Source: Octopus sinensis (lineage: Eukaryota). Taken from it: 64,000 nt of DNA. How positions within the stretch are numbered: position 1 is the first letter of the stretch; every line of letters starts with the position of its first letter. Of the stretch, positions 9,937-63,989 are shown in pieces. Location: positions 38,998,001 through 39,062,000 of the forward strand of contig NC_043013.1 in assembly GCF_006345805.1 (NCBI RefSeq), read 5' to 3'. A program made the position numbers and the translations under genes. Below the pieces are notes generated by a model, which ran no database searches, was not told the origin of the DNA, and saw only the letters and a list, made by a program, of their open reading frames with translations.

Positions 9937-9980
<44 letters not shown>

Positions 9981-10004
9981 TCATATATATATATATATAT
10001 ATAG

Positions 10005-10090
<86 letters not shown>

Positions 10091-11133
10091 GACTTCTTTC
10101 AGTTTCCATCTACTAAATCCACACACAAGGCTCTGGTCGGCCCGAGGCTATAGTAGAAGACACTTGCCCAAGGTGCCACGCAGAGGGACTGAACCCGGAA
10201 CCATGTGGTTGGTAAGCAAGCTACTTTATTTCATAAAATTTGTCATCATAGACAGTACACAGAGTGTGTAGCTTTGCGGGCTGAACAAACACATTAATGA
10301 ATGAAAATGAAATAGAATGAATAAATGAGAGACGAAACCCAACACCCGCCGATTGGATTTTTCTCGAAAACATATTTTCTTTTTTTAAAAATCAATATGA
10401 GGTTTCAAACCTCTTACAAGAAGGAGGCACTAAAACCTCTTACTTAACAGGGTTTTTTTTTAAACACACAATTAAGGTTATAAACCACTACAAATAATAC
10501 AATAAGATGAGGTTTCAAACCCTATAACGAGGGTCTTTCACCTCCTACTCTTCGATATATCCATCGATATAGTCATCATTATCTTCAATGCCGCTTGAGT
10601 TCCTGTATCCCGCCATTTCCCATGCCTCACTCATGTAGGACATGTCAGTCGTGAAAGGGCCACCCGGCCATATGCGACACTCCTCCCCAAATCCTTTAAG
10701 CCTTTCCCACAAGGGAAATCTTATGACCTCCACAGCTATCTGCGGAGGCCATTTGGGATCCCGTGTGAAGGGCATATCTACTGTCTCTTTATGTTCTTCT
10801 ACTATTTTTTCCACATCCCCGCCCTTATAGAAAATGATAATTAACTGATCATCTTTAAGGGTGGGGGTGGTTTCTTCCACCGTGGGTGGCACAACTTCGG
10901 GACATGCAGATGGCACATCATCTCCCCGCTGAGATGACCCGTTCTTCTTCCTTCTTTTTTTCTTTTCTTCCTGACTTCGGGAGAGTGGAGCTCTTCCGCT
11001 TTGTCCGGAGACTCTCCCTCGCCTCCCGAAGCTTAGATCTGTTGCGGCCGATGGGGTCCACAGGGTCAAAATCGCTTTTGACCCTTCCCAATCGACCGCC
11101 GCAAGCTACTTACCTCACAGCCACTCCTACGCC
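9843..11133 (-). mobile_element. Family A SINE split by the 874-bp insertion (body 9843-10226, head 11101-11133)
   Basis: Intact copies (e.g. about 30715-30755) read GGTAAGCAAGCTACTTACCACACAGCCACTCCTACGCC. Here GCAAGCTACTT is duplicated and the two halves are 874 bp apart. Confidence 0.9.
10227..11100 (-). mobile_element. 874-bp TSD-flanked retro-insertion with an unidentified 184-codon ORF (11099-10545) and an AT-rich 3' UTR
   Basis: 11-bp direct repeat GCAAGCTACTT at 10216-10226 and 11101-11111. The frame is open from the 5' junction to TAG, and the coding part is visibly more GC-rich than the flanks. Confidence 0.8.
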
Positions 11134-11366
11134 AATAGTAATTTTAAATGAAATATATTTCCTACTCCACCATAAATGTTTTAATATATTCCATCTTATA
11201 TAAGTATCGATATTATATTATAAAACGGCCAGTGATTATTTTCGATTAAATATTTTTCGATAAATATTATTGGAGATCCATAAGAACATCTTCTGACCGT
11301 TTTAAATTTTCTTTACGTAATTATTTTATCCATTTGAATTTTATTGTTCTTTTTATTCTATGTGGA

Positions 11367-11746
11367 AGCACTCCGTCGGTTACGACGACGAGGGTTCCGG
11401 TTGATCCGAATCAACGGAACAGCCTGCTCGTGAAATTAACGTGTAAGTGGCTGAGCACTCCACAGACACGTGTACCCTTAACGTAGTTCTCGGGGATATT
11501 CAGCATGACACAGAGAGTTACAAGGCCGGCCCCTTGAAATTCAGGTACAACAGAAACAGGAAGTAAGAGTGAGAGAAAGTTGTGGTGAAAGAGTACAGCA
11601 GGGATCACCACCATCCCCTGCCGGAGCCTCGTGGAGCTTTTAGGTGTTTTCGCTCAATAAACACTCACAACGCCCGGTCTGGGAATCGAAACCGCGATCC
11701 TATGACCGCGAGTCCGCTGCCCTAACCACTGGGCCATTGCGCCTCC
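11367..11746. mobile_element. Adjacent SINE fragments (GCACTCCGTCGGTTACGACG... family, plus my family D on the minus strand at 11570-11746)
   Basis: Matches copies at about 15125-15460, 36870-37170, 50990-51300, 51865-52163 and 55935-56213. Confidence 0.7.
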
Positions 11747-11922: not shown

Positions 11923-12519
11923 TTTCTTTACTGCCCACAAGGGGCTAAACACAAAGAGGACAAACAAGGACAGACAAATAGATTAAGTCGATTACATCGA
12001 CCCCAGTGCGAAACTGGTACTTTATTTATCGACCCCGAAAGGATGAAAGGCAAAGTCGACCTCGACGGAATTTGAACTCAGAACGTAACGACAGACGAAA
12101 TACCTATTTCTTTATTACCCACAAGGGGCTAAACATAGAGTGGACAAACAAGGACAGACATAGGTATTAAGTCGATTACATCGACACCGGTGCGTAACTG
12201 GTTCTTAATTTATCGACCCCGAAAGGATGAAAGGCAAAGTCGACCTCGGCGGAATTTGAACTCAGAACGTAACGACAGACGAAATACCTATTTCTTTATT
12301 ACCCACAAGGGGCTAAACATAGAGGGGACAAACAAGGACAGACATAGGTATTAAGTCGATTACATCGACCCCAGTGCGTAACTGGTACTTTATTTATCGA
12401 CGCCGAAAGGATGAAAGGCAAAGTCGACCTCGGCGGAATTTGAACTCAGAACGTAACGGCAGACGAAATGCGGCTACGCATTTCGCCCGGCGCGCTAACG
12501 TCTCTGCCAGCTCGCCGCC
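11923..12519 (-). mobile_element. Family B SINE with three tandem body copies
   Basis: Units of about 180 bp joined twice by the same GACGAAATAC|CTATTTCTTTA junction. Confidence 0.88.
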
Positions 12520-12705
12520 TTATGTATGTGTGAATATATACATAAGACGGACTGTTAGGCGTAACAGGATGTGAGCGTATAAATACGTAAATAATATTAG
12601 TGTGTATAAATGTATCTATGTGTAGATGTGCTTGCGTGTGTGTGTAGGAGCATGTTTAACACGGTACATATAGCAAAATGTGATACGTTTGTATATTAAT
12701 TGTGT

Positions 12706-16120: not shown

Positions 16121-16420
16121 TCACAGTTCTTCTCGTGGACAAGAGACACCTGTACCCCCCAGGCCACAATAACCTGAGGGGTTTTTATGCAGGTATTGCT
16201 GGTGGTAATCTTCGGCATAGTAAAACTGTGTTGCTGGACGTATTTCAGTGGTTATAGCTGGGAAGCCTTTTTCTTTTAGAGCTGCCTCATACTTTTCTTT
16301 TGTCTCTTGTGCTTCCTTCAACTGCTGCTCACCATAGCAATAGATGGCTGACCGATATGTGGTACCAATGTCATTTCCTTGTCGCATTCCCTGGGTTGGG
16401 TTGTGACTCTCCCAGAATAT
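16121..16420 (-). CDS. MsrA: MsrA terminal coding exon ([27 protein letters not shown]...[33 protein letters not shown])
   Basis: TTACAG acceptor; 300 nt to TGA. Carries the RQGNDxGTxYRSAIY, AEDYHQQYL and [12 protein letters not shown] motifs (Cys197 and Cys206, the presumed resolving cysteines). Corresponds to track ORF 16121..16438. Confidence 0.97.
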
Positions 16421-16423
16421 CTG

Positions 16424-16461
16424 TAATAATGATAACAAAAATAATAATAATAATAATAATG

Positions 16462-17365: not shown

Positions 17366-18845
17366 TCTTAGTTAGTTAGTTAGTTAGTTAATTTGGCTCA
17401 AAAGCAAATAGCAAGGCCATGTAGGGGGACATGGAGTTAAGTACAGGGTGGTGTTCATGTAAAGAGTTCAGGCCACTTGAGGTCCAGGGAGGCTTTGAAC
17501 AAAGCGGTCGTCGGCATCTTCACCATCTCGTCTGGCAGCTTGTTCCACGGATCCGCAACCCGGACAGAGAACACTCCTCTCCTTCGATTGAGATGAAATC
17601 GTCGCAGGTAGAGCTTTTCGGAATGACCCCGCAGCCGACGCTCCGGAGCAGGAGTGAAGAACAGCTCTTTCGAGAGGTTACACTTGCCGCTTATGATGTT
17701 GTGGGCGAGAATGAGATCACCACGGTGGCGGCGTTTTTCAAGAGAATAAAGGTCGAGCGTCCTCAGCCTTTCTTCGTAGGACAAATTTTTGAGACCATGA
17801 ACCATGCGGGTAGCCAGCCTCTGGACTCTTTCGAGATGCTGTATGTCTTTGAGGAGATAAGGAGAAGAGGCTTGAATCCCATACTACAATATGGGTCTCA
17901 CCAGCGTGACATAGAGTGGCAGGAATATGGCTGCTGTGAGCATTCCGAATGACCGTCGAATCAAAAACAGAATTCCGCGCGCTTTGTTGGCAGCATGGAC
18001 GCACTGGGCCGAAGGCGAAAAGGTGGAATCCACCAAGATACCCAGGTCCTTTACCTGATCGGTCCTCTCCAGCAGCAGACGACCCGGCTCGAAATCAAGT
18101 TGAGTTGCAGGAGTAGAGCCGACAGGCAGATGACAGCACTTTGACACGTTCAGACACAGGTCCCAATCGTTAGACCACTTCCAAATTTGGTGGAGGCATC
18201 AACGAAGATCCTCTATACTACCGCGAGGAGCAACCAGTTTGATATCGTCAGCAAATAGAAGGGTATGTTGCGTGAGGTCGTCGGGCAAGTCATTTATGAA
18301 GACTAAGAACAACAAGGGCCCAAGCACTGAACCTTGAGGCACGCCACTGCTCGCACTGGAGACGTCGGACCGCGAACCATTAACTTGAACTTGGAAGGAG
18401 CGATCTGAGAGGAAGGCACCAACCCATCGTACAATATCCGGATGGAAACTATATGCTTGAAGCTTGACAAGTAGTAGGCGGTGGTTTACCGAGTCAAAAG
18501 CTTTGGCAAAGTCCAATAAAACGATGTCAACAGCATCACTATCATCGAGGATGCGCGTCACCAATTCTTCCATTACTAGTAAGTTGGTCAAGCATGATCT
18601 CTTCGGCACGAAGCCGTGTTGGGAATCAGTGATCAAGCTGTGTTTAGGAGGTGGAGCATCATACTTTTCTTAAGGATGGTTTCGAACATCTTGCTGATTA
18701 TTGATGTAAGGGAAACCGGTCGGTAGTTAAGCGAGTCTTCGCGGCTCCCTTTCTTGAAAATTGGGCAGATTATCGCTGTTCTCCAGTCTGCAGGTATAAC
18801 ACCCGTCGCCAATGACATATTGAATAGTCGTGTAAATGAGCAAGG
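17366..18845 (-). mobile_element. 5'-truncated CR1-clade LINE (RT plus C-terminus, frameshifted) with a (TAAC)n tail, in MsrA intron 4
   Basis: Track ORFs 18633..18818, 18199..18636, 17884..18147 and 17455..17805 give NYRPVSLTS, QHGF..SCLTNL, LDFAKAFDSV, SGVPQGSVLGP, LFADD and RRGVFSVRVADPWNKLP. (GTTA)n lies at about 17366-17390 on the + strand. Confidence 0.95.
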
Positions 18846-23670: not shown

Positions 23671-24036
23671 ATTAACAATTAAGGAACGGCCATAATAGGC
23701 CATTCACCCACTAGAAATAACAGCCAAAGCTTCTACCGCAAATAAAGATTAATTCCGTAAACAGGAGAAAATTAAAAAAACATTTACCCTGTAATTTCTT
23801 GTACGGTATACCGTTTCATCCGCTGTTTAATGGTAAACCAACCTGATTAAATTTAATTAATCAGGTTGGTTTACCATTAAACAGCGGATGAAACGGTATA
23901 CCGTACAAGAAATTACAGGGTAAATGTTTTTTTAATTTTCTCCTGTTTACGGAATTAATCTTTATTTGCGGTAGAAGCTTTGGCTGTTATTTCTAGTGGG
24001 TGAATGGCCTATTATGGCCGTTCCTTAATTGTTAAT
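23671..24036. repeat. Perfect inverted repeat: 180-bp arms with a 6-nt loop
   Basis: Checked base by base: 23671-23850 is the exact reverse complement of 23857-24036; the loop is ATTTAA. Confidence 0.97.
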
Positions 24037-30584: not shown

Positions 30585-30755
30585 CATATATATGACGGGC
30601 TTCTTTTAGTTTCCGTCTACCAAATCCATTCACAAGGCTTTGGTCGCCCAGAGGCTATAGTAGAAGACACTTGCCCAAAGTGCCATGCAGTGGGACTGAA
30701 CCCGGAACCACGTGGTTGGTAAGCAAGCTACTTACCACACAGCCACTCCTACGCC
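30301..30755 (-). mobile_element. Family A SINE, full length
   Basis: Head GGCGTAGGAGTGGCTGTGTGGTAAGTAGC through to the tail. Confidence 0.88.
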
Positions 30756-33529: not shown

Positions 33530-34308
33530 CACCAAACTCTACAGTTAAAACTCTCAATGAAGAGACTCTTAAGGAACTAAAAGAGACCAACACGAATTTG
33601 AGACTTCTAATTAGCAAGATCGATTAACTCACTCACTTTGCACAAGAGGCAAAAGAAAAAGAAGAGAAAGAACAATCTCTGGAACAACTCAATCAACATT
33701 TGTCTGAATTCTGCACCACTCTTCATTCTTTATCTCATAATAATTATTTAAATGAAAATCCATCTACAGATGATACACAAGACAGAGCCACCTCCAGGCT
33801 TACACTATCTATTAAAAACAGCATTATCGACATATGGAATGAAGAACTTAAAGCCAGAAGATTTTCATTCTGGAATATGATTAAAAATAACCACAAGGCA
33901 GAAATTTATGAATGCTGGTTAAATTCTACACCAATAATTTTGCCTCATAAATTCCAAATTAAACGTATTCCAAATGAGCAGGACCTGCAAAGACAATTAA
34001 GGGAGAAACTAACACTGGAAAAAATGAAGACAGAAATAGAACCCCTTAAGCTTAGAGCGCTAAGCAATGAACAAAAATTTAAAAACATAGATAAGGAAAT
34101 CTACAACGAATTCAAGAAACATTCAGATGGTCAAAGCTTGGAAAGTGTTATTAAACTGGGAAAGACAAGCCAATTTCTTTTTTTTAATTACGAAACACAG
34201 TTCAACATAGAAAACACATCGGATAACCCCTTCCTGAAGAAAAATAAACCAAAAAATATCACAGAAATGATCCCACGCTTATCTAACACAAAACTACAGA
34301 CGATCTAA
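33530..34308 (+). pseudogene. Decayed coiled-coil ORF, probably retroelement-derived (unassigned)
   Basis: The 202-aa track ORF has no ATG start and extends upstream through one stop. It has no flanking splice signals and sits antisense within MsrA intron 1. Confidence 0.4.
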
Positions 34309-35777: not shown

Positions 35778-36144
35778 TTACTTGTTTCAGTCATTTGACT
35801 GCGGCCATGCTGGAGCACCGCCTTTAGTCGAGCAAATCGACCCCGGGACTTATTCTTTGTAAGCCCAGTACTTATTCTATCGGTCTGTTTTGCCGAACCG
35901 CTAAGTGACGGGGATGTAAACACACCAGCATCGGTTGTCAAGCAATGCTAGGGGGACAAACACAGACACACAAATACACATATATATACATATATACGAC
36001 AGGCTTCTTTCAGTTTCCGTCTACCAAATCCACTCACAAGGCATTGGTCGGCCCGGGGCTATAGCAGAAGACATTTGCCCAAGATGCCACGCAGTGGGAT
36101 TGAACCCGGAACCATGTAGTTGGTTAGCAAGCTACTTACCACAC
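35778..36144 (-). mobile_element. Family A SINE
   Basis: Matches the other copies; a + strand partial copy lies at about 35395-35560. Confidence 0.85.
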
Positions 36145-42685: not shown

Positions 42686-42997
42686 GGCGTAAGAGTGGCT
42701 GTGTGGTAAGTAGCTTGCTTACGAACCACATAGTTCTGGGTTCAGTCCCACTGCCTGGCACCTTGGGCAAGTGTCTTCTACTATAGCCTTGGGCTGACCA
42801 AAGCCTTGTGAGTGGATTTGGAAGATAGAAACTGAAAGAAGCCCGTTGTATATATGTATATACATATGTGTGCATGTGTATATGTTTGTGTCTGTCTTTG
42901 TCTCCCAACATCGCTTGACAACCAATGCTGGAGTGTTTACTTCTCCGTAACTTAGCAGTTCGGCCATGCTCCAGCATGACTGAAACAAATAAAAGAG
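42686..42997 (+). mobile_element. Family A SINE with an internal deletion
   Basis: Head and tail match the other copies. Confidence 0.8.
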
Positions 42998-44696: not shown

Positions 44697-45094
44697 TTAA
44701 TGGCTTCAATTCTAACTCTTTACATTCTGATTTCAAATTCTGCCAAGGACAACTTTGCCTTTCATACTTTTGGTGTCAATAAAATAAGTACCAAATGAAC
44801 ATTGGGGGAGGGGGTCAATGTAATCAACTTTTCCCCTCCTCTCAAAACAGCTGACCTTGGTACCTAAATCAGAAATAATAAAGGCTGTGATTTGGCAGTA
44901 TCATTGTTACACTGGAGGAAATACTTAGTGGCATTTCTTACAGTTCGTTCCGAGTTCAAATCCTGCTAGGGTTGACTTTGTCATTCAATCCTTTCAGGGT
45001 CGATAAAATAAGTACCAGTTGAACTCTGGGGTCAATGTAATCGACTTATCACACTCCTTAAAATTGCTGCCCTTGTATCAAAACTAGAAAGTTA

Positions 45095-45104
45095 TTATTA
45101 TTAT

Positions 45105-45151
<47 letters not shown>

Positions 45152-45432
45152 TCATTATTATCATCATAATCATCATCATCATCATCATTATTATTATTAG
45201 TATTATTATTATTATCATTATTATTATCATTATTATCATTATTATTATCATCATTATCATCATTATCATCATCATCATCATTATTATTAGTAGTATTATT
45301 ATTATTATCATTATTATTATCATTATTATCATTATTATTATCATCATTATCATCATTATAATCATCATCATCATTATTATTATTATCATTATTATTATTA
45401 TTATTATCATTATTATTATTATTATTATTATT
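45095..45432. repeat. Compound (ATT/AGT/ATC)n trinucleotide repeat
   Basis: Direct reading; source of the poly-N/D/I ORFs. Confidence 0.97.
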
Positions 45433-45697
45433 GAGTGAGGTACACCAGGAACATGCATCACAAACATGTGCGTGACATGGTGGTGATCCATACATATATG
45501 TAAATAAATACATATGTATATGTGTGTATGTGTCTGTGTTTGTCTTTCACCCACCACTTGACAACTAGTGTTGGTTTGTTTACATCCTCGTAACTAAGCT
45601 GTCAAGCAAAGGAGACTGAAAGCATAAGTACAGCGACCAACTTGATTGTGGTGCCCCAGCATGGCTGCAGTCCAATGACTGAAACAAATAAAAGATT

Positions 45698-51300: not shown

Positions 51301-51406
51301 TGTATATATATGTATGTAATATATATATATGTTGTGTATATATATTATATATATATACATATTATATATATATATACATATATATATACACATACAACAC
51401 ACACAC

Positions 51407-51438
<32 letters not shown>

Positions 51439-51455
51439 GTATATATATATATATA

Positions 51456-51486
<31 letters not shown>

Positions 51487-51508
51487 GTAGATTTATATAT
51501 ATATATTA

Positions 51509-51543
<35 letters not shown>

Positions 51544-51562
51544 GTAGATTTATATATATATA

Positions 51563-51606
<44 letters not shown>

Positions 51607-51611
51607 GATAT

Positions 51612-51653
<42 letters not shown>

Positions 51654-51659
51654 ATATGT

Positions 51660-51750
<91 letters not shown>

Positions 51751-56318: not shown

Positions 56319-57783
56319 TCAATAGCACAAACATCTCAATGAACTGATTCTAGAAGGAAGTTTACGATCATTTAAATAGGTCGCACTCCTTGGCCGGTGG
56401 TTTATTGCGGTATAGTAAGTGTAAAACAACTTGCTCTAAACGAATATGAAAAAAAAAAGGCGCTCTTGCGAAAGGGGGTGGGTGGGGGAGGGGACTCGGA
56501 ACATTCATGATGTGAATGTTCCGAGTCGCCTCACCAGAGCCAAGAAACAAAAGAAAAATAGAGTAATAGGTGTAAAACAACTCATCGAATGGCAACATCT
56601 ATATACTAAAAATAACAACAAAAAATCCCTCTTAAAACAAACATATACACTCACACACCATCCGATTGTCTTAGTGATATGCGACGAGACTAGATAATTT
56701 TGTCTAAGACACACTATTTCTGATGAAGATCACAGCCGGGATAGTTTAGTTGGTGTCAAAATAATGACATTGCGATCGAGCAAGTCTTAATGACACCGTT
56801 GCTTTAAAACAAATTGCCAAAAATTGTATTATAAAAAAGTATTATAAAATTGAGAAAATCTGAGGGTACTTCTGTATTTAGTTGAGTGTTAAAAATAGTA
56901 CAGTAAACAGAAATGATAATCCAAAAAGATGATAATGTAAAAATGCGGCCGTACTTACATAACAGCGGAATCGGTCCGATCTGGTCTGCTTGCGCAAAAT
57001 AATGTAAATGTTAAGGGAGGTAACTCTAAATTCAACTTCTGGAGACTACTCCTTTATCACCGTTTACAAAGAGTTCTGGGTTTTTAATACATTTATTTAC
57101 TTTATTTGTCTTATCATTTATATTGCACTTGTTTCAGTCATTTGACGGCGCCGATGCGGGGAAAACCAGCTTGATGGGTTTCAGTCGAACGAATCGAGCC
57201 CCCCCCCACCACCACCACCACCACCAACTACGTCTCTTTTTGATAATTGTTCAGTTTAGCTATTTTTAGAAAAGTATATAAAATTTATTTCTTTATTGCC
57301 CACAAGGGGCTAAACATAGAGGGGACAAACAAAGACAGACAAAGGGATTAAGTCAACTACATCGACCCCAGTGCGCAACTGGTACTTTATTTATCGACCC
57401 CGAAAGGATGAAAGGCAAAGTCGACCTCGGCGGTGTTTGAACCCAGAACGTAACGACAGATGAAATACTGCTGAGCATTTTGCCCGGCGTGCTAACGATT
57501 CTGTCAGCTCGCCAGTATATAAAATTAAGGAGAGATAAGTAGTAAAAGAAGCAGCTTTTTATACAGCATAAAGACTGTCTCCGGATCTTTTCCTTTTGAA
57601 CGGCAGTTTTCAACACAATTTCTAGTTAACTAAACACTTTTGAACTTCGTATACTGGTAGAATATGTCAAAATAAAACATTTTTTTCTCTTGGCTTTCTT
57701 GAGAAAATTGTAATTTGTAAATTTAACATAGTTTAATTTTTCGAATTTTAACCAATCCTATGCCCTCTATTTAGCTAAAATCA

Positions 57784-60113: not shown

Positions 60114-60513
60114 TTTTACTTGTTTCAGTCAGTTGACTGTGGCCATGCTGGAGCACCGTCTTTAGTCGACCAAATCGACCCCAGGACTTATTCTTTGTAA
60201 GCCTAGTACTTATTCTATTGATCTCATTTGCCGAACCGCTAAGTTACGGGGACGTAAACATATCAGCATAGGTTGCCAAGCGATGTTGGGGGGACAAACA
60301 CAGACACACAAGCACATACACACACATACATACATACATATACATATATACGACGGGATTCTTTCAGTTTCCGTCTACCAAATCCACTCACAAGGCTTTG
60401 GTCGGCTCGAGGCTATAGTAGAAGACACTTGCCTAAGGTGCCACGCAGTGGGACTGAACCCGGAACCACGTTGTTCGTTAGCAAGCTACTTACCACACAG
60501 CAGCTCTTACGCC
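60114..60513 (-). mobile_element. Family A SINE, full length
   Basis: Matches the other copies. Confidence 0.87.
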
Positions 60514-63612: not shown

Positions 63613-63989
63613 TCTACTGAAAGCACAAGGCCTCAAATTGGGGGAAAGGATAGGGTCGATTACATCGACCCAGTACTCAACTGTACTTAATTATCAATGC
63701 CGAAAGGCAAAGTCGACCTCGACGGAATTTGAACTAGTGGCAGACAAAATAACTATTTCTTTACTGCCCACAAGGGGCTAAACACAGAGAGGACAAACAA
63801 GACAAGGTCAGACAAATGGATTAAGTCGATTATATCGACCCCAGTGCGTAACTGGTACTTATTTAATCGACCCCGAAAGGATGAAAGGCAAAGTCGACCT
63901 CGACGGAATTTGAACTCAGAACGTAACGGCAGACGAAATACCGCTAAGCATTTCGCCCGGCGCGCTAACGTTTCTGCCAGCTCGCCGCC
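63612..63989 (-). mobile_element. Family B SINE, dimeric body
   Basis: Junction GACAAAATAA|CTATTTCTTTA at about 63745-63762. Confidence 0.85.

What the first reader, a model, noticed from the sequence alone, without database searches (positions are those of the whole stretch)
10227..11100. Orphan-ORF retro-insertion with an 11-bp TSD planted in the head of a SINE
Seen: an 874-bp segment flanked by GCAAGCTACTT direct repeats splits a family A SINE. Its minus strand is open from the 5' junction for 184 codons (AVDWEGSKAILTLWTPS...EEKKKRRKKNG...RDPKWPPQIAVEVIRFPLWERLKGFGEECRIWPGGPF...acidic tail). A ~320-nt AT-rich 3' UTR follows, with AATAAA formed across the junction. The insert also has a 9-bp hairpin (GGGTCAAAA-TCGC-TTTTGACCC, 11063-11084) and a twice-repeated ATGAGGTTTCAAACC. 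The protein has a basic NLS-like patch and no RT or endonuclease motif that I recognise. Inference: a young, 5'-truncated target-primed insertion. It could be the end of an undescribed LINE (possibly SINE- or tRNA-head-targeting, as some Tx1-group elements are target-specific), a retrocopy of an unknown gene, or a captured viral mRNA. The target lies in the hairpin GGTAAG-CAAGCTA-CTTACC.
Basis: partly seen in the sequence, partly recalled or inferred. Interest (0 to 1): 0.8.

Follow-up and report, generated by a model that had tools for sequence, protein, structure and literature searches.

The report
Orphan-ORF retro-insertion splitting an old SINE
An 874-bp piece of foreign DNA with an unrecognisable reading frame really was pasted into an older short repeat of this cephalopod-like genome, most likely by ordinary RNA-copying retrotransposition, and its family could not be named because no host-genome data were available.

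Summary
Window 10227-11100 (874 bp) is flanked by an exact 11-bp direct repeat, GCAAGCTACTT. It interrupts a tRNA-derived SINE that other copies in the window carry uninterrupted, so this is a true target-site duplication. The minus strand is open for 184 codons from the junction, followed by a 318-nt AT-rich tail with no poly(A).

There are no terminal inverted repeats, no LTRs, no RT, endonuclease or ribozyme signal, and no second copy in the window. The protein matches nothing in Pfam, PDB, 1.84 billion representative proteins, or the viral, metagenome and prokaryote collections. A control search showed that the host genome is absent from those databases, so "orphan" is a weak statement.

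Two features are new. The 5' end of the insert coincides, to within 1 nt, with the base of a 56-nt hairpin (z -5.7), and the whole GC-rich part is unusually hairpin-rich. Codons 1-61 show no coding periodicity, whereas codons 62-184 do. "5'-truncated" is therefore unproven, and the copy may be a complete short element.

With only 2 Cys and 1 His, no CCHC motif and no poly(A), a Tx1-like identity is not supported. The most likely reading is an inert, target-primed retro-insertion from an uncatalogued LINE-dependent family. Interest is modest.

The parts
10081..10226 (-). Body-side piece of the interrupted tRNA-derived SINE. The SINE sense strand is the minus strand. The piece ends with the left copy of the duplicated target.
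   Evidence: It is 90-92% identical to intact copies at 42708-42853, 60359-60491, 30600-30733 and 36004-36137.
10216..10226 (.). Left copy of the target-site duplication, GCAAGCTACTT. The last two bases are ambiguous between target and insert, so the duplication is 9-11 bp.
   Evidence: Exact repeat. The overlap of the two SINE pieces on intact copies is exactly 11 bp.
10227..11100 (-). The 874-bp insert. Its sense strand is taken to be the minus strand, on the evidence of the reading frame alone.
   Evidence: It is the only copy in the window. It has no TIRs and no Rfam family.
10227..10544 (-). AT-rich 3' untranslated tail of 318 nt, with no poly(A) or microsatellite tail. It contains a degenerate internal duplication.
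   Evidence: GC is 33%. Folding is only weakly better than shuffles, z -1.8. Repeats D1 and D3 and a 51-nt pair at about 70% identity.
10397..10411 (+). First copy of ATGAGGTTTCAAACC. It forms one arm of a small stem-loop in the tail.
10507..10521 (+). Second copy of ATGAGGTTTCAAACC, just 3' of the stop codon in the element's sense.
10545..11099 (-). Open frame of 184 codons plus the TAG stop, open to the 5' junction. It has no internal stop or frameshift and no in-frame ATG in its first half. The product is an orphan: residues 1-61 are basic (pI 10.9, with a KKKRRKK patch), residues 62-160 look like a mixed alpha/beta domain, and residues 161-184 are acidic.
   Evidence: No homologue found.
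11044..11099 (-). Hairpin 1. It begins at the second nucleotide of the insert and has a perfect 10-bp core at 11062-11085.
   Evidence: dG -34.4 kcal/mol, z -5.7, 0 of 200 shuffles. It is the fourth most stable 61-nt window of about 32,000 scanned on both strands.
10969..11037 (-). Hairpin 2, the second strong stem-loop of the 5' region.
   Evidence: The first 201 nt have dG -84.1, z -5.3. Inverted repeat I10.
10942..10972 (-). 31-nt polypurine run in the element's sense strand. It encodes the EEKKKRRKK patch.
   Evidence: Read directly from the sequence.
11101..11111 (.). Right copy of the target-site duplication, GCAAGCTACTT.
11101..11133 (-). Head-side piece of the interrupted SINE, its first 33 nt in sense orientation.
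   Evidence: It is 94-97% identical to 30723-30755 and 42686-42718 and aligns with them.

Best explanation
This is a single, inert retro-insertion. An RNA of about 0.87 kb, whose sense is the window's minus strand, was copied into the genome by the machinery of a non-LTR retrotransposon. The target was cut with a 9-11-bp stagger inside the palindromic arm of an older SINE head. The free 3' end of the window's plus strand (...CTACTT) primed reverse transcription directly at the end of the RNA's 3' UTR, without a poly(A) tail. Repair of the stagger produced the duplication.

Because there is no A-tail, the enzyme probably recognised this 3' UTR itself, in the 'stringent' mode of LINE/partner recognition. 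I therefore take the RNA to be a member of an uncatalogued LINE-dependent family. It could be the 3' module of an autonomous element, or a short non-autonomous and possibly internally deleted derivative whose natural 5' end is the hairpin at 11044-11099. I judge it less likely to be an ordinary mRNA.

The copy encodes no RT or endonuclease, cannot move by itself, and most likely does nothing beyond splitting the SINE.

Shown here: the insertion, the duplication, the absence of TIRs, LTRs and a tail, and the open frame. Inferred: an RNA intermediate, the strand assignment and the family.
For: - An exact 11-bp duplication, with the SINE continuing in register on both sides.
- No terminal inverted repeats; the alignment score is below the shuffled mean. 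No LTR-type ends and no second copy nearby.
- A 184-codon frame on one strand, ending where GC drops from 50% to 33%. It is reached by 6 of 5000 shuffles. Three-base periodicity, with 39% G at codon position 1, is present in codons 62-184 (p 0.018).
- No A-run at the 3' junction.
- The duplication length lies in the range I recall for endonuclease-plus-TPRT insertions.
- Several LINE clades (RTE, Dong-R4, CR1, L1-Tx1, Hero) and 58 'unknown' families are reported as recently active in Octopus vulgaris (PMC13282606). Both the enzymes and uncatalogued passengers are therefore plausible, if the window is from an octopus.
Against: - There is no RT, endonuclease or conserved LINE C-terminal signature in the last 184 codons. 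The frame has no similarity to the C-terminal piece of the LINE fragment in the same window.
- No relative was found among 1.84 billion representative proteins. A word-index search of the related 5.8-billion-cluster collection with this window's RT fragment returned 4253 hits, so LINE fragments are abundant in these protein collections. That argues against a conserved ORF2 terminus.
- No other copy was seen, so membership of a 'family' is assumed.
- The strand assignment rests on the frame alone. The hairpins are equally good on both strands, with 10 versus 11 pairs lost.
- The first 61 codons show no periodicity (p 0.91), and a second frame is open across the first 60.
Confidence: 0.5

Rival explanations
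1. One reading: the insert is the ordinary, randomly 5'-truncated 3' end of an undescribed autonomous LINE. The 184 codons would be the C-terminus of its polymerase frame, or a third frame. It might be site-specific for the SINE head, like Tx1-group elements.
For: The frame is open right up to the 5' junction with no early ATG, as in truncated LINE copies. The duplication and lack of TIRs fit. L1-Tx1 families are reported as recently active in O. vulgaris.
Against: - With 2 Cys and 1 His, the CCHC knuckle of L1/Tx1 and of R2/R4/Dong/Hero C-termini cannot be present.
- There is no poly(A).
- There is no similarity to any LINE fragment in the protein libraries, although such fragments are abundant there.
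- The 5' end coincides with a hairpin base. I estimate about a 3% chance of that under random truncation, given about six hairpins in 553 nt.
- All 5 other copies of the 11-mer target in the window are empty.
Confidence: 0.2
2. The insert is a retrocopy of the 3' part of a host or viral messenger RNA, made in trans by a resident LINE. The orphan frame would be the end of a lineage-specific gene.
For: The layout is a coding-like frame followed by an AT-rich UTR. AATAAA can be read at the very 3' end if the two ambiguous A belong to the RNA. The host proteome is absent from the searched databases: the best hit to this window's own RT fragment is only 64% identical. A host parent gene would therefore have been missed.
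Against: - There is no poly(A) tail, which trans-mobilised mRNAs normally carry.
- The insert would have to be primed inside the poly(A) signal.
- No viral relative was found.
- The coding part is far more hairpin-rich (z -5.4; -3.9 without the leader) than the host msrA exon (z +0.3) or the RT fragment (z +2.1) in the same window.
Confidence: 0.15
3. The RNA sense is the opposite (plus) strand. The insert would be a non-coding, 5'-truncated retroelement tail whose 3' end is the terminal stem-loop at 11044-11099, as in LINE or SINE tails recognised by their reverse transcriptase. The 184-codon antisense frame would be a by-product of purine-rich, stop-poor composition.
For: A strong stem-loop lies within 1 nt of that end. 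The plus-sense fold is just as exceptional, z -6.2. The hairpins show no strand preference. Shuffles of this composition already average 100 open codons. Codons 1-61 lack periodicity.
Against: 184 open codons are still reached in only 0.12% of shuffles. Codons 62-184 show coding periodicity. The frame ends exactly at the GC-to-AT transition. A non-coding tail longer than 870 nt would be unusually long.
Confidence: 0.08
4. The insertion was DNA-mediated. It could be a Mutator-like or Pack-MULE-type element carrying a captured gene fragment, or a DNA fragment captured during repair of a staggered break.
For: A 9-11-bp duplication is the Mutator range, from my knowledge of the superfamily. Read as 9 bp, the stagger is symmetric about the dyad of the 19-bp target palindrome. 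Mutator families are reported as recently active in O. vulgaris.
Against: There are no terminal inverted repeats at all: local alignment score 11 against a shuffled mean of 13. There is no transposase trace. The symmetry argument has about a 1-in-5 chance expectation once the three possible duplication lengths are allowed for.
Confidence: 0.05
5. The feature is an assembly artefact, that is, a chimeric join.
For: None specific. Reads were not available.
Against: A mis-join would not recreate an exact 11-bp duplication with the SINE continuing in register on both sides.
Confidence: 0.02

Closest known systems
5'-truncated ('dead-on-arrival') copies of non-LTR retrotransposons (LINEs)
   Same: A variable-length target-site duplication, no TIRs or LTRs, a frame that runs into the 5' junction without a start codon, a 3' UTR at the other end, and insertion into another repeat.
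   Different: There is no RT, endonuclease, CCHC or conserved C-terminal signature. There is no poly(A) or microsatellite tail. The 5' end coincides with a strong hairpin rather than an arbitrary point. No relative was found among the abundant LINE fragments in the protein libraries.
Non-autonomous, internally deleted LINE derivatives (for example the R2 'SIDE' elements and ORF1-only 'HAL1'-type elements; from my knowledge of the literature, not tested here)
   Same: A short unit that would keep a structured 5' end and the 3' UTR of a parent element, with a remnant frame lacking its own start. It would be mobilised in trans by recognition of the 3' UTR, without an A-tail.
   Different: No parent element is known. 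No ribozyme was detected in the 5' region (Rfam). My own inspection of the predicted fold, which is not a tool test, found no HDV-like arrangement. Only one copy has been seen.
Processed retrocopies (retropseudogenes) of cellular mRNAs
   Same: Coding sequence followed by a UTR, flanked by a duplication of about 11 bp, with no introns visible.
   Different: There is no poly(A) tail, the parent gene is unknown, and the RNA secondary structure is exceptional.
Pack-MULE / Mutator-like elements
   Same: A duplication of 9-11 bp, and carriage of an unrelated open frame.
   Different: There are no terminal inverted repeats.

Membership tests
Non-LTR (target-primed) retro-insertion | Target-site duplication of variable length flanking the copy | tested here: met
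   An exact 11-bp repeat (9-11 bp allowing for two ambiguous bases). Intact SINE copies show a single copy of the site.
Non-LTR (target-primed) retro-insertion | No terminal inverted or long terminal direct repeats | tested here: met
   Local alignment of the two ends scores 11 against a shuffled mean of 13. No direct terminal repeats were found.
Non-LTR (target-primed) retro-insertion | A 3' tail: poly(A), A-rich or short tandem repeats | tested here: not met
   The sense strand ends ...TTTTATGAAATA directly at the duplication. No tandem repeat lies inside the insert.
Non-LTR (target-primed) retro-insertion | Sequence belongs to a LINE (RT or endonuclease upstream in longer copies) or shares a LINE's 3' end | not testable with these tools
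   The host genome is absent from every searchable collection. The best match to the window's own RT fragment is 64% identical. No other copy is in the window.
   The 184 residues contain 2 Cys and 1 His. There is no Pfam hit.
L1 / Tx1 group | Poly(A) or A-rich 3' end | tested here: not met
L1 / Tx1 group | Repeated use of the same target sequence | tested here: inconclusive
   There is one event only. The 5 other copies of the 11-mer in the window are unoccupied. A genome-wide census was not possible.
LINEs with a restriction-like endonuclease (R2, R4/Dong, Hero, NeSL) | C-terminal CCHC knuckle plus a PD-(D/E)XK nuclease domain | tested here: not met
   There are too few Cys and His residues. 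No family hit was found in Pfam or the PDB sequences.
CR1 / L2-type LINEs | Conserved ORF2 C-terminal domain and a microsatellite-like 3' end | tested here: not met
   There is no similarity to the C-terminal piece of the LINE fragment at 17458-17805 (E 7.6). Assigning that fragment to the CR1 type rests on my memory only. There are no terminal repeats.
Penelope-like elements | GIY-YIG endonuclease at the C-terminus; hammerhead ribozymes in the terminal repeats | tested here: not met
   No Pfam hit. No ribozyme family at E up to 10.
Processed retrocopy of an mRNA | Poly(A) tail downstream of a poly(A) signal | tested here: not met
   AATAAA exists only across the junction, and no A-run follows it.
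Processed retrocopy of an mRNA | An intron-bearing parent gene elsewhere in the genome | not testable with these tools
   No host genome or proteome is in the collections.
Mutator-like / Pack-MULE DNA transposon | 9-11-bp target-site duplication | tested here: met
Mutator-like / Pack-MULE DNA transposon | Terminal inverted repeats | tested here: not met
Endogenous non-retroviral viral element | Detectable similarity of the frame to a viral protein | tested here: not met
   No match in phage records, IMG/VR contigs, PHROGs or 1.84 billion representative proteins that include metagenomes. A structure comparison was not possible because model pLDDT was 37-47.

The most novel reading that the evidence does not exclude
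The insert is a full-length member of an undescribed cephalopod retroelement family. Such an element would be short, start with a strongly structured two-hairpin leader, carry an orphan non-RT protein, have no A-tail, and have a preference for the palindromic arm of the tRNA-like SINE head, which it would cut symmetrically with a 9-bp stagger.
Probability: 0.08. Interest if true: 0.6.

Novelty: new member of a known kind. Interest (0 to 1): 0.3.

Why it matters
If the insert is only a lone dead retrocopy, it matters little. It would be one more nested insertion in a repeat-rich genome, useful at most as a presence/absence marker.

It would matter more if a genome-wide census showed a family whose copies all start at the hairpin, carry this orphan protein and repeatedly hit the same SINE position. 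That would add a new kind of LINE-dependent passenger with target preference to the poorly catalogued cephalopod mobilome. The latest O. vulgaris annotation still lists 58 recently active 'unknown' families (PMC13282606).

The unusual density of hairpins inside an apparently coding stretch is also worth a look in animals known for structure-dependent RNA editing. That link is my own speculation.

Tried and rejected
**Homology searches, all empty**
- The 184-aa product: Pfam gave only a low-complexity sub-threshold hit, DUF612 at E 0.035. PDB sequences, NCBIfam and PHROGs gave nothing.
- The word-index search of 5.8 billion clusters found nothing for the whole protein or for the C-terminal 106 aa. 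The HMMER search of 1.84 billion representatives found nothing.
- tblastn against phage records found nothing. Back-translated pattern scans of viral, prokaryotic-genome and metagenome contigs found nothing. An exact-product look-up found nothing.
- The alternative 60-codon frame and the plus-strand frames had no family hit.

**Control**
- The window's own RT fragment finds 4253 relatives, but the best is only 64% identical. The contigs behind the top hits are unrelated at the DNA level. The host genome is therefore not in these databases, and the negatives say less than they seem to.

**Structure**
- Two single-sequence AlphaFold2 runs gave pLDDT 37 and 47. That is too poor for a fold search, so none was run.

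**RNA families**
- Rfam at E up to 10 returned no ribozyme or known RNA.
- I considered an HDV-like 5' ribozyme, as in some LINEs. I rejected it on my own inspection of the predicted fold (a simple nested hairpin with a 4-nt loop), not on a tool test.

**Other checks**
- The hairpin pattern in metagenomes matched only 24-30-nt bacterial terminator-like hairpins. It had no match in viral contigs.
- Vector contamination was considered because AGATCT and AAGCTT are adjacent in the insert. There was no match in PLSDB plasmids.
- TIR search: none.
- I first thought G.U pairs favoured the minus strand. A proper count is symmetric, so that argument was withdrawn.
- Literature and supplement search for the sequence in the truncated octopus transcriptome file found nothing. 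No paper text holds the SINE motif.

Full report
**1. The observation**

The 11-mer GCAAGCTACTT lies at 10216-10226 and again at 11101-11111. It belongs to a tRNA-derived SINE that is present many times in the window. I compared the two pieces separately with intact copies.

The left piece (10081-10226) matches 42708-42853, 60359-60491, 30600-30733 and 36004-36137 at 90-92% identity. The right piece (11101-11133) matches 30723-30755 and 42686-42718 at 94-97%. On the intact copies the two matches overlap by exactly the 11 bases, and a multiple alignment shows those 11 columns as the only shared ones. This is therefore a true target-site duplication around an 874-bp insert, 10227-11100.

The two T at 10225-10226 (AA in the element's sense) could equally be the last bases of the insert, so the duplication is 9-11 bp. 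A mis-assembly would not produce an in-register duplication.

**2. Anatomy of the insert**

- *Reading frame.* The minus strand is open for 184 codons from 11099 to 10548, with stop TAG at 10545-10547 and no stop or frameshift in between. Dinucleotide shuffles of that stretch average 100 open codons, because the composition is stop-poor. Only 6 of 5000 reach 184.
- *Composition.* GC is 50% in the frame, 33% in the following 318-nt tail and 36% in the window.
- *3' end.* The sense strand ends ...TTTTATGAAATA directly at the duplication, with no A-run and no microsatellite. AATAAA exists only by borrowing the two ambiguous A.
- *Quoted motifs.* The hairpin and the doubled ATGAGGTTTCAAACC are both real.
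- *Copies and ends.* There is no other copy or fragment of the insert in the 64 kb, even at low stringency. There are no terminal inverted repeats.

**3.

*(a) The quoted 9-bp hairpin is part of a much larger structure.* It is the core of a 56-nt stem-loop that starts at the second nucleotide of the insert (11044-11099). Its dG is -34.4 kcal/mol, z is -5.7, and 0 of 200 shuffles fold as well. It is the fourth most stable 61-nt window among about 32,000 scanned on both strands of the whole window. A second strong stem-loop follows at 10969-11037, and the first 201 nt have z -5.3. A 31-nt polypurine run then follows at 10942-10972.

*(b) The whole GC-rich 553 nt is hairpin-rich.*

| Stretch | z-score |
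|---|---|
| Insert 10548-11100, minus sense | -5.4 |
| Insert 10548-11100, plus sense | -6.2 |
| Same, minus sense, without the first 131 nt | -3.9 |
| RT fragment 18202-18636 | +2.1 |
| Host msrA exon 16124-16438 | +0.3 |
| Seven ordinary background windows | -1.3 to +1.4 |

Three further background windows scored -5.8 to -12.8; I attribute these to the TA-type simple repeats and the large palindrome near 23.8 kb that are common in this window. Three of the nine most stable local structures in the window lie inside the insert. G.U pairs do not favour either strand, with 10 versus 11 pairs lost on the complement. The structure therefore does not tell the sense.

*(c) Coding signal is uneven.* Codons 62-184 show three-base periodicity (p 0.018; G is 39% at position 1 and 18% at position 2). 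Codons 1-61 show none (p 0.91). A second frame is open across the first 60 codons as well. The 5' ~180 nt may therefore be a structured non-coding leader that happens to be open.

Together these points weaken the '5'-truncated' reading. With about six hairpins in 553 nt, I estimate a random truncation point would fall within 2 nt of a hairpin base about 3% of the time. This is a rough, after-the-fact figure.

**4. The protein**

The product has 184 aa. Residues 1-61 are basic (pI 10.9, with KKKRRKK). Residues 62-160 are mildly acidic, with a predicted beta-alpha pattern. Residues 161-184 form an acidic tail. The whole sequence has only 2 Cys and 1 His.

No family or relative was found anywhere:
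- Pfam, PDB sequences, NCBIfam and PHROGs.
- The 5.8-billion-cluster word search, for the whole protein and for the C-terminal domain.
- The exhaustive HMMER search of 1.84 billion representatives.
- Phage records, and viral, prokaryote and metagenome contigs.
- Single-sequence structure models were too poor to use, at pLDDT 37 and 47.

A control matters here. The RT fragment at 18202-18636 of this same window finds 4253 relatives, but the best is only 64% identical and comes from an unrelated, highly fragmented assembly. The host genome and its repeats are therefore simply not in these databases.

The negatives show that the frame is not a widely conserved LINE, viral or cellular domain. They do not show that it is unique in its own genome.

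**5. What it most likely is**

A staggered cut with fill-in, no TIRs, no LTRs, and a frame plus UTR layout together point to target-primed reverse transcription by a resident non-LTR element. The plus-strand end ...CTACTT-3' would have primed cDNA synthesis at the RNA's 3' end.

The absence of any A-tail argues against the L1-type route that copies ordinary mRNAs. It favours an enzyme that recognises the 3' UTR itself. This is an inference from general knowledge of 'stringent' LINE/partner pairs. I therefore favour a LINE-dependent family: either the 3' module of an autonomous element, or a short and possibly internally deleted non-autonomous derivative whose natural 5' end is hairpin 1.

The copy has no enzymatic domain and is best regarded as inert.

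RTE, Dong-R4, CR1, L1-Tx1 and Hero LINEs and 58 unclassified families are reported as recently active in O. vulgaris (PMC13282606). RTE and Dong elements with complete frames are reported in O. bimaculoides (PMC9115989).

**6. Specific identities tested**

- *Tx1/L1 and the nuclease-bearing R2/R4/Dong/Hero group.* These need a CCHC motif near the C-terminus, which is impossible with 2 Cys and 1 His. There is also no poly(A).
- *CR1/L2-type.* There is no similarity to the C-terminal piece of the in-window LINE fragment and no terminal repeats.
- *Penelope-like.* No GIY-YIG domain and no hammerhead ribozyme.
- *Mutator/Pack-MULE.* The duplication length fits but TIRs are absent.
- *Viral capture.* No support.
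- *Target specificity.* This is untestable from one event. The five other copies of the 11-mer in the window are unoccupied.
- *Symmetric cut.* Read as 9 bp, the stagger is symmetric about the dyad of the target palindrome. That is a curiosity with roughly a 1-in-5 chance expectation.

**7. Age**

The perfect duplication (22 bases in total) is weak evidence for youth. An intact 552-nt frame is better evidence that little time has passed, or that the frame is constrained. The host SINE copy differs by 8-10% from its relatives, and the insert must be younger than that SINE.

**8. Verdict**

This is a real and cleanly delimited insertion. The mechanism is ordinary, and the family is unknown mainly for want of host data. 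Two unexplained details remain: the hairpin at the boundary and the hairpin-rich coding-like region. The Tx1-like, SINE-targeting and viral readings are not supported. A genome-wide census of copies would settle the question quickly.

Noticed in passing
window 16124-16438 (-): This is a host coding exon, the C-terminal part of a peptide methionine sulfoxide reductase (PF01625, E 7e-30). The insert lies about 5 kb downstream on the same strand.
   Followed up: partly
window 17458-18818 (-): A decayed LINE fragment with an RVT_1 reverse-transcriptase domain (E 2e-21). Its frame is broken by 2 in-frame stops and at least 1 frameshift. From memory only, its C-terminal piece looks CR1/L2-like. It is unrelated to the insert.
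   Followed up: partly
window 33700-34308 (+): A 202-codon open frame, lysine- and glutamate-rich and AT-rich, with no Pfam family. It may be an ORF1-like frame of another retroelement. Its RNA fold z-score is -3.3.
   Followed up: no
window 56481-56541 and 23824-23884: These are the two most stable local palindromes in the window (dG -41 and -40 kcal/mol over 61 nt). They are probably foldback or MITE-type inverted repeats.
   Followed up: no
window 12460-12520 and 63928-63988 (-): Two copies of another repeat family share a GC-rich, strongly folding segment (dG -35 and -31). The same family appears to lie just right of the split SINE, around 11360-11600.
   Followed up: no
window 10548-11100: There is an excess of hairpins throughout an apparently coding stretch (z -5.4; three of the nine strongest local folds of the 64 kb). 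It is unexplained. It could reflect RNA-level signals of the element, or, speculatively, the structure-rich transcripts of animals with heavy RNA editing.
   Followed up: partly
window 11030-11041 (-): AGATCT and AAGCTT are adjacent in the insert and look like a cloning-site remnant. A search of 72,556 plasmid records found no match, so I take this to be chance.
   Followed up: yes
window 9939-10085, and many other sites such as 45058-45557 and 51310-51711: Long (AC)n and (AT)n microsatellites sit inside or next to the SINE copies, and there are long AAT-type simple repeats. Both generate spurious long 'ORFs' in the mechanical ORF list.
   Followed up: no
loci L001, L002 (assembly GCA_052426985.1): The closest database relatives of the window's RT fragment (59-60% identity) come from a very fragmented NCBI assembly with millions of short contigs. 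At the DNA level they match this window only over a 78-79-nt stretch of the RT fragment, at 73-75% identity.
   Followed up: partly
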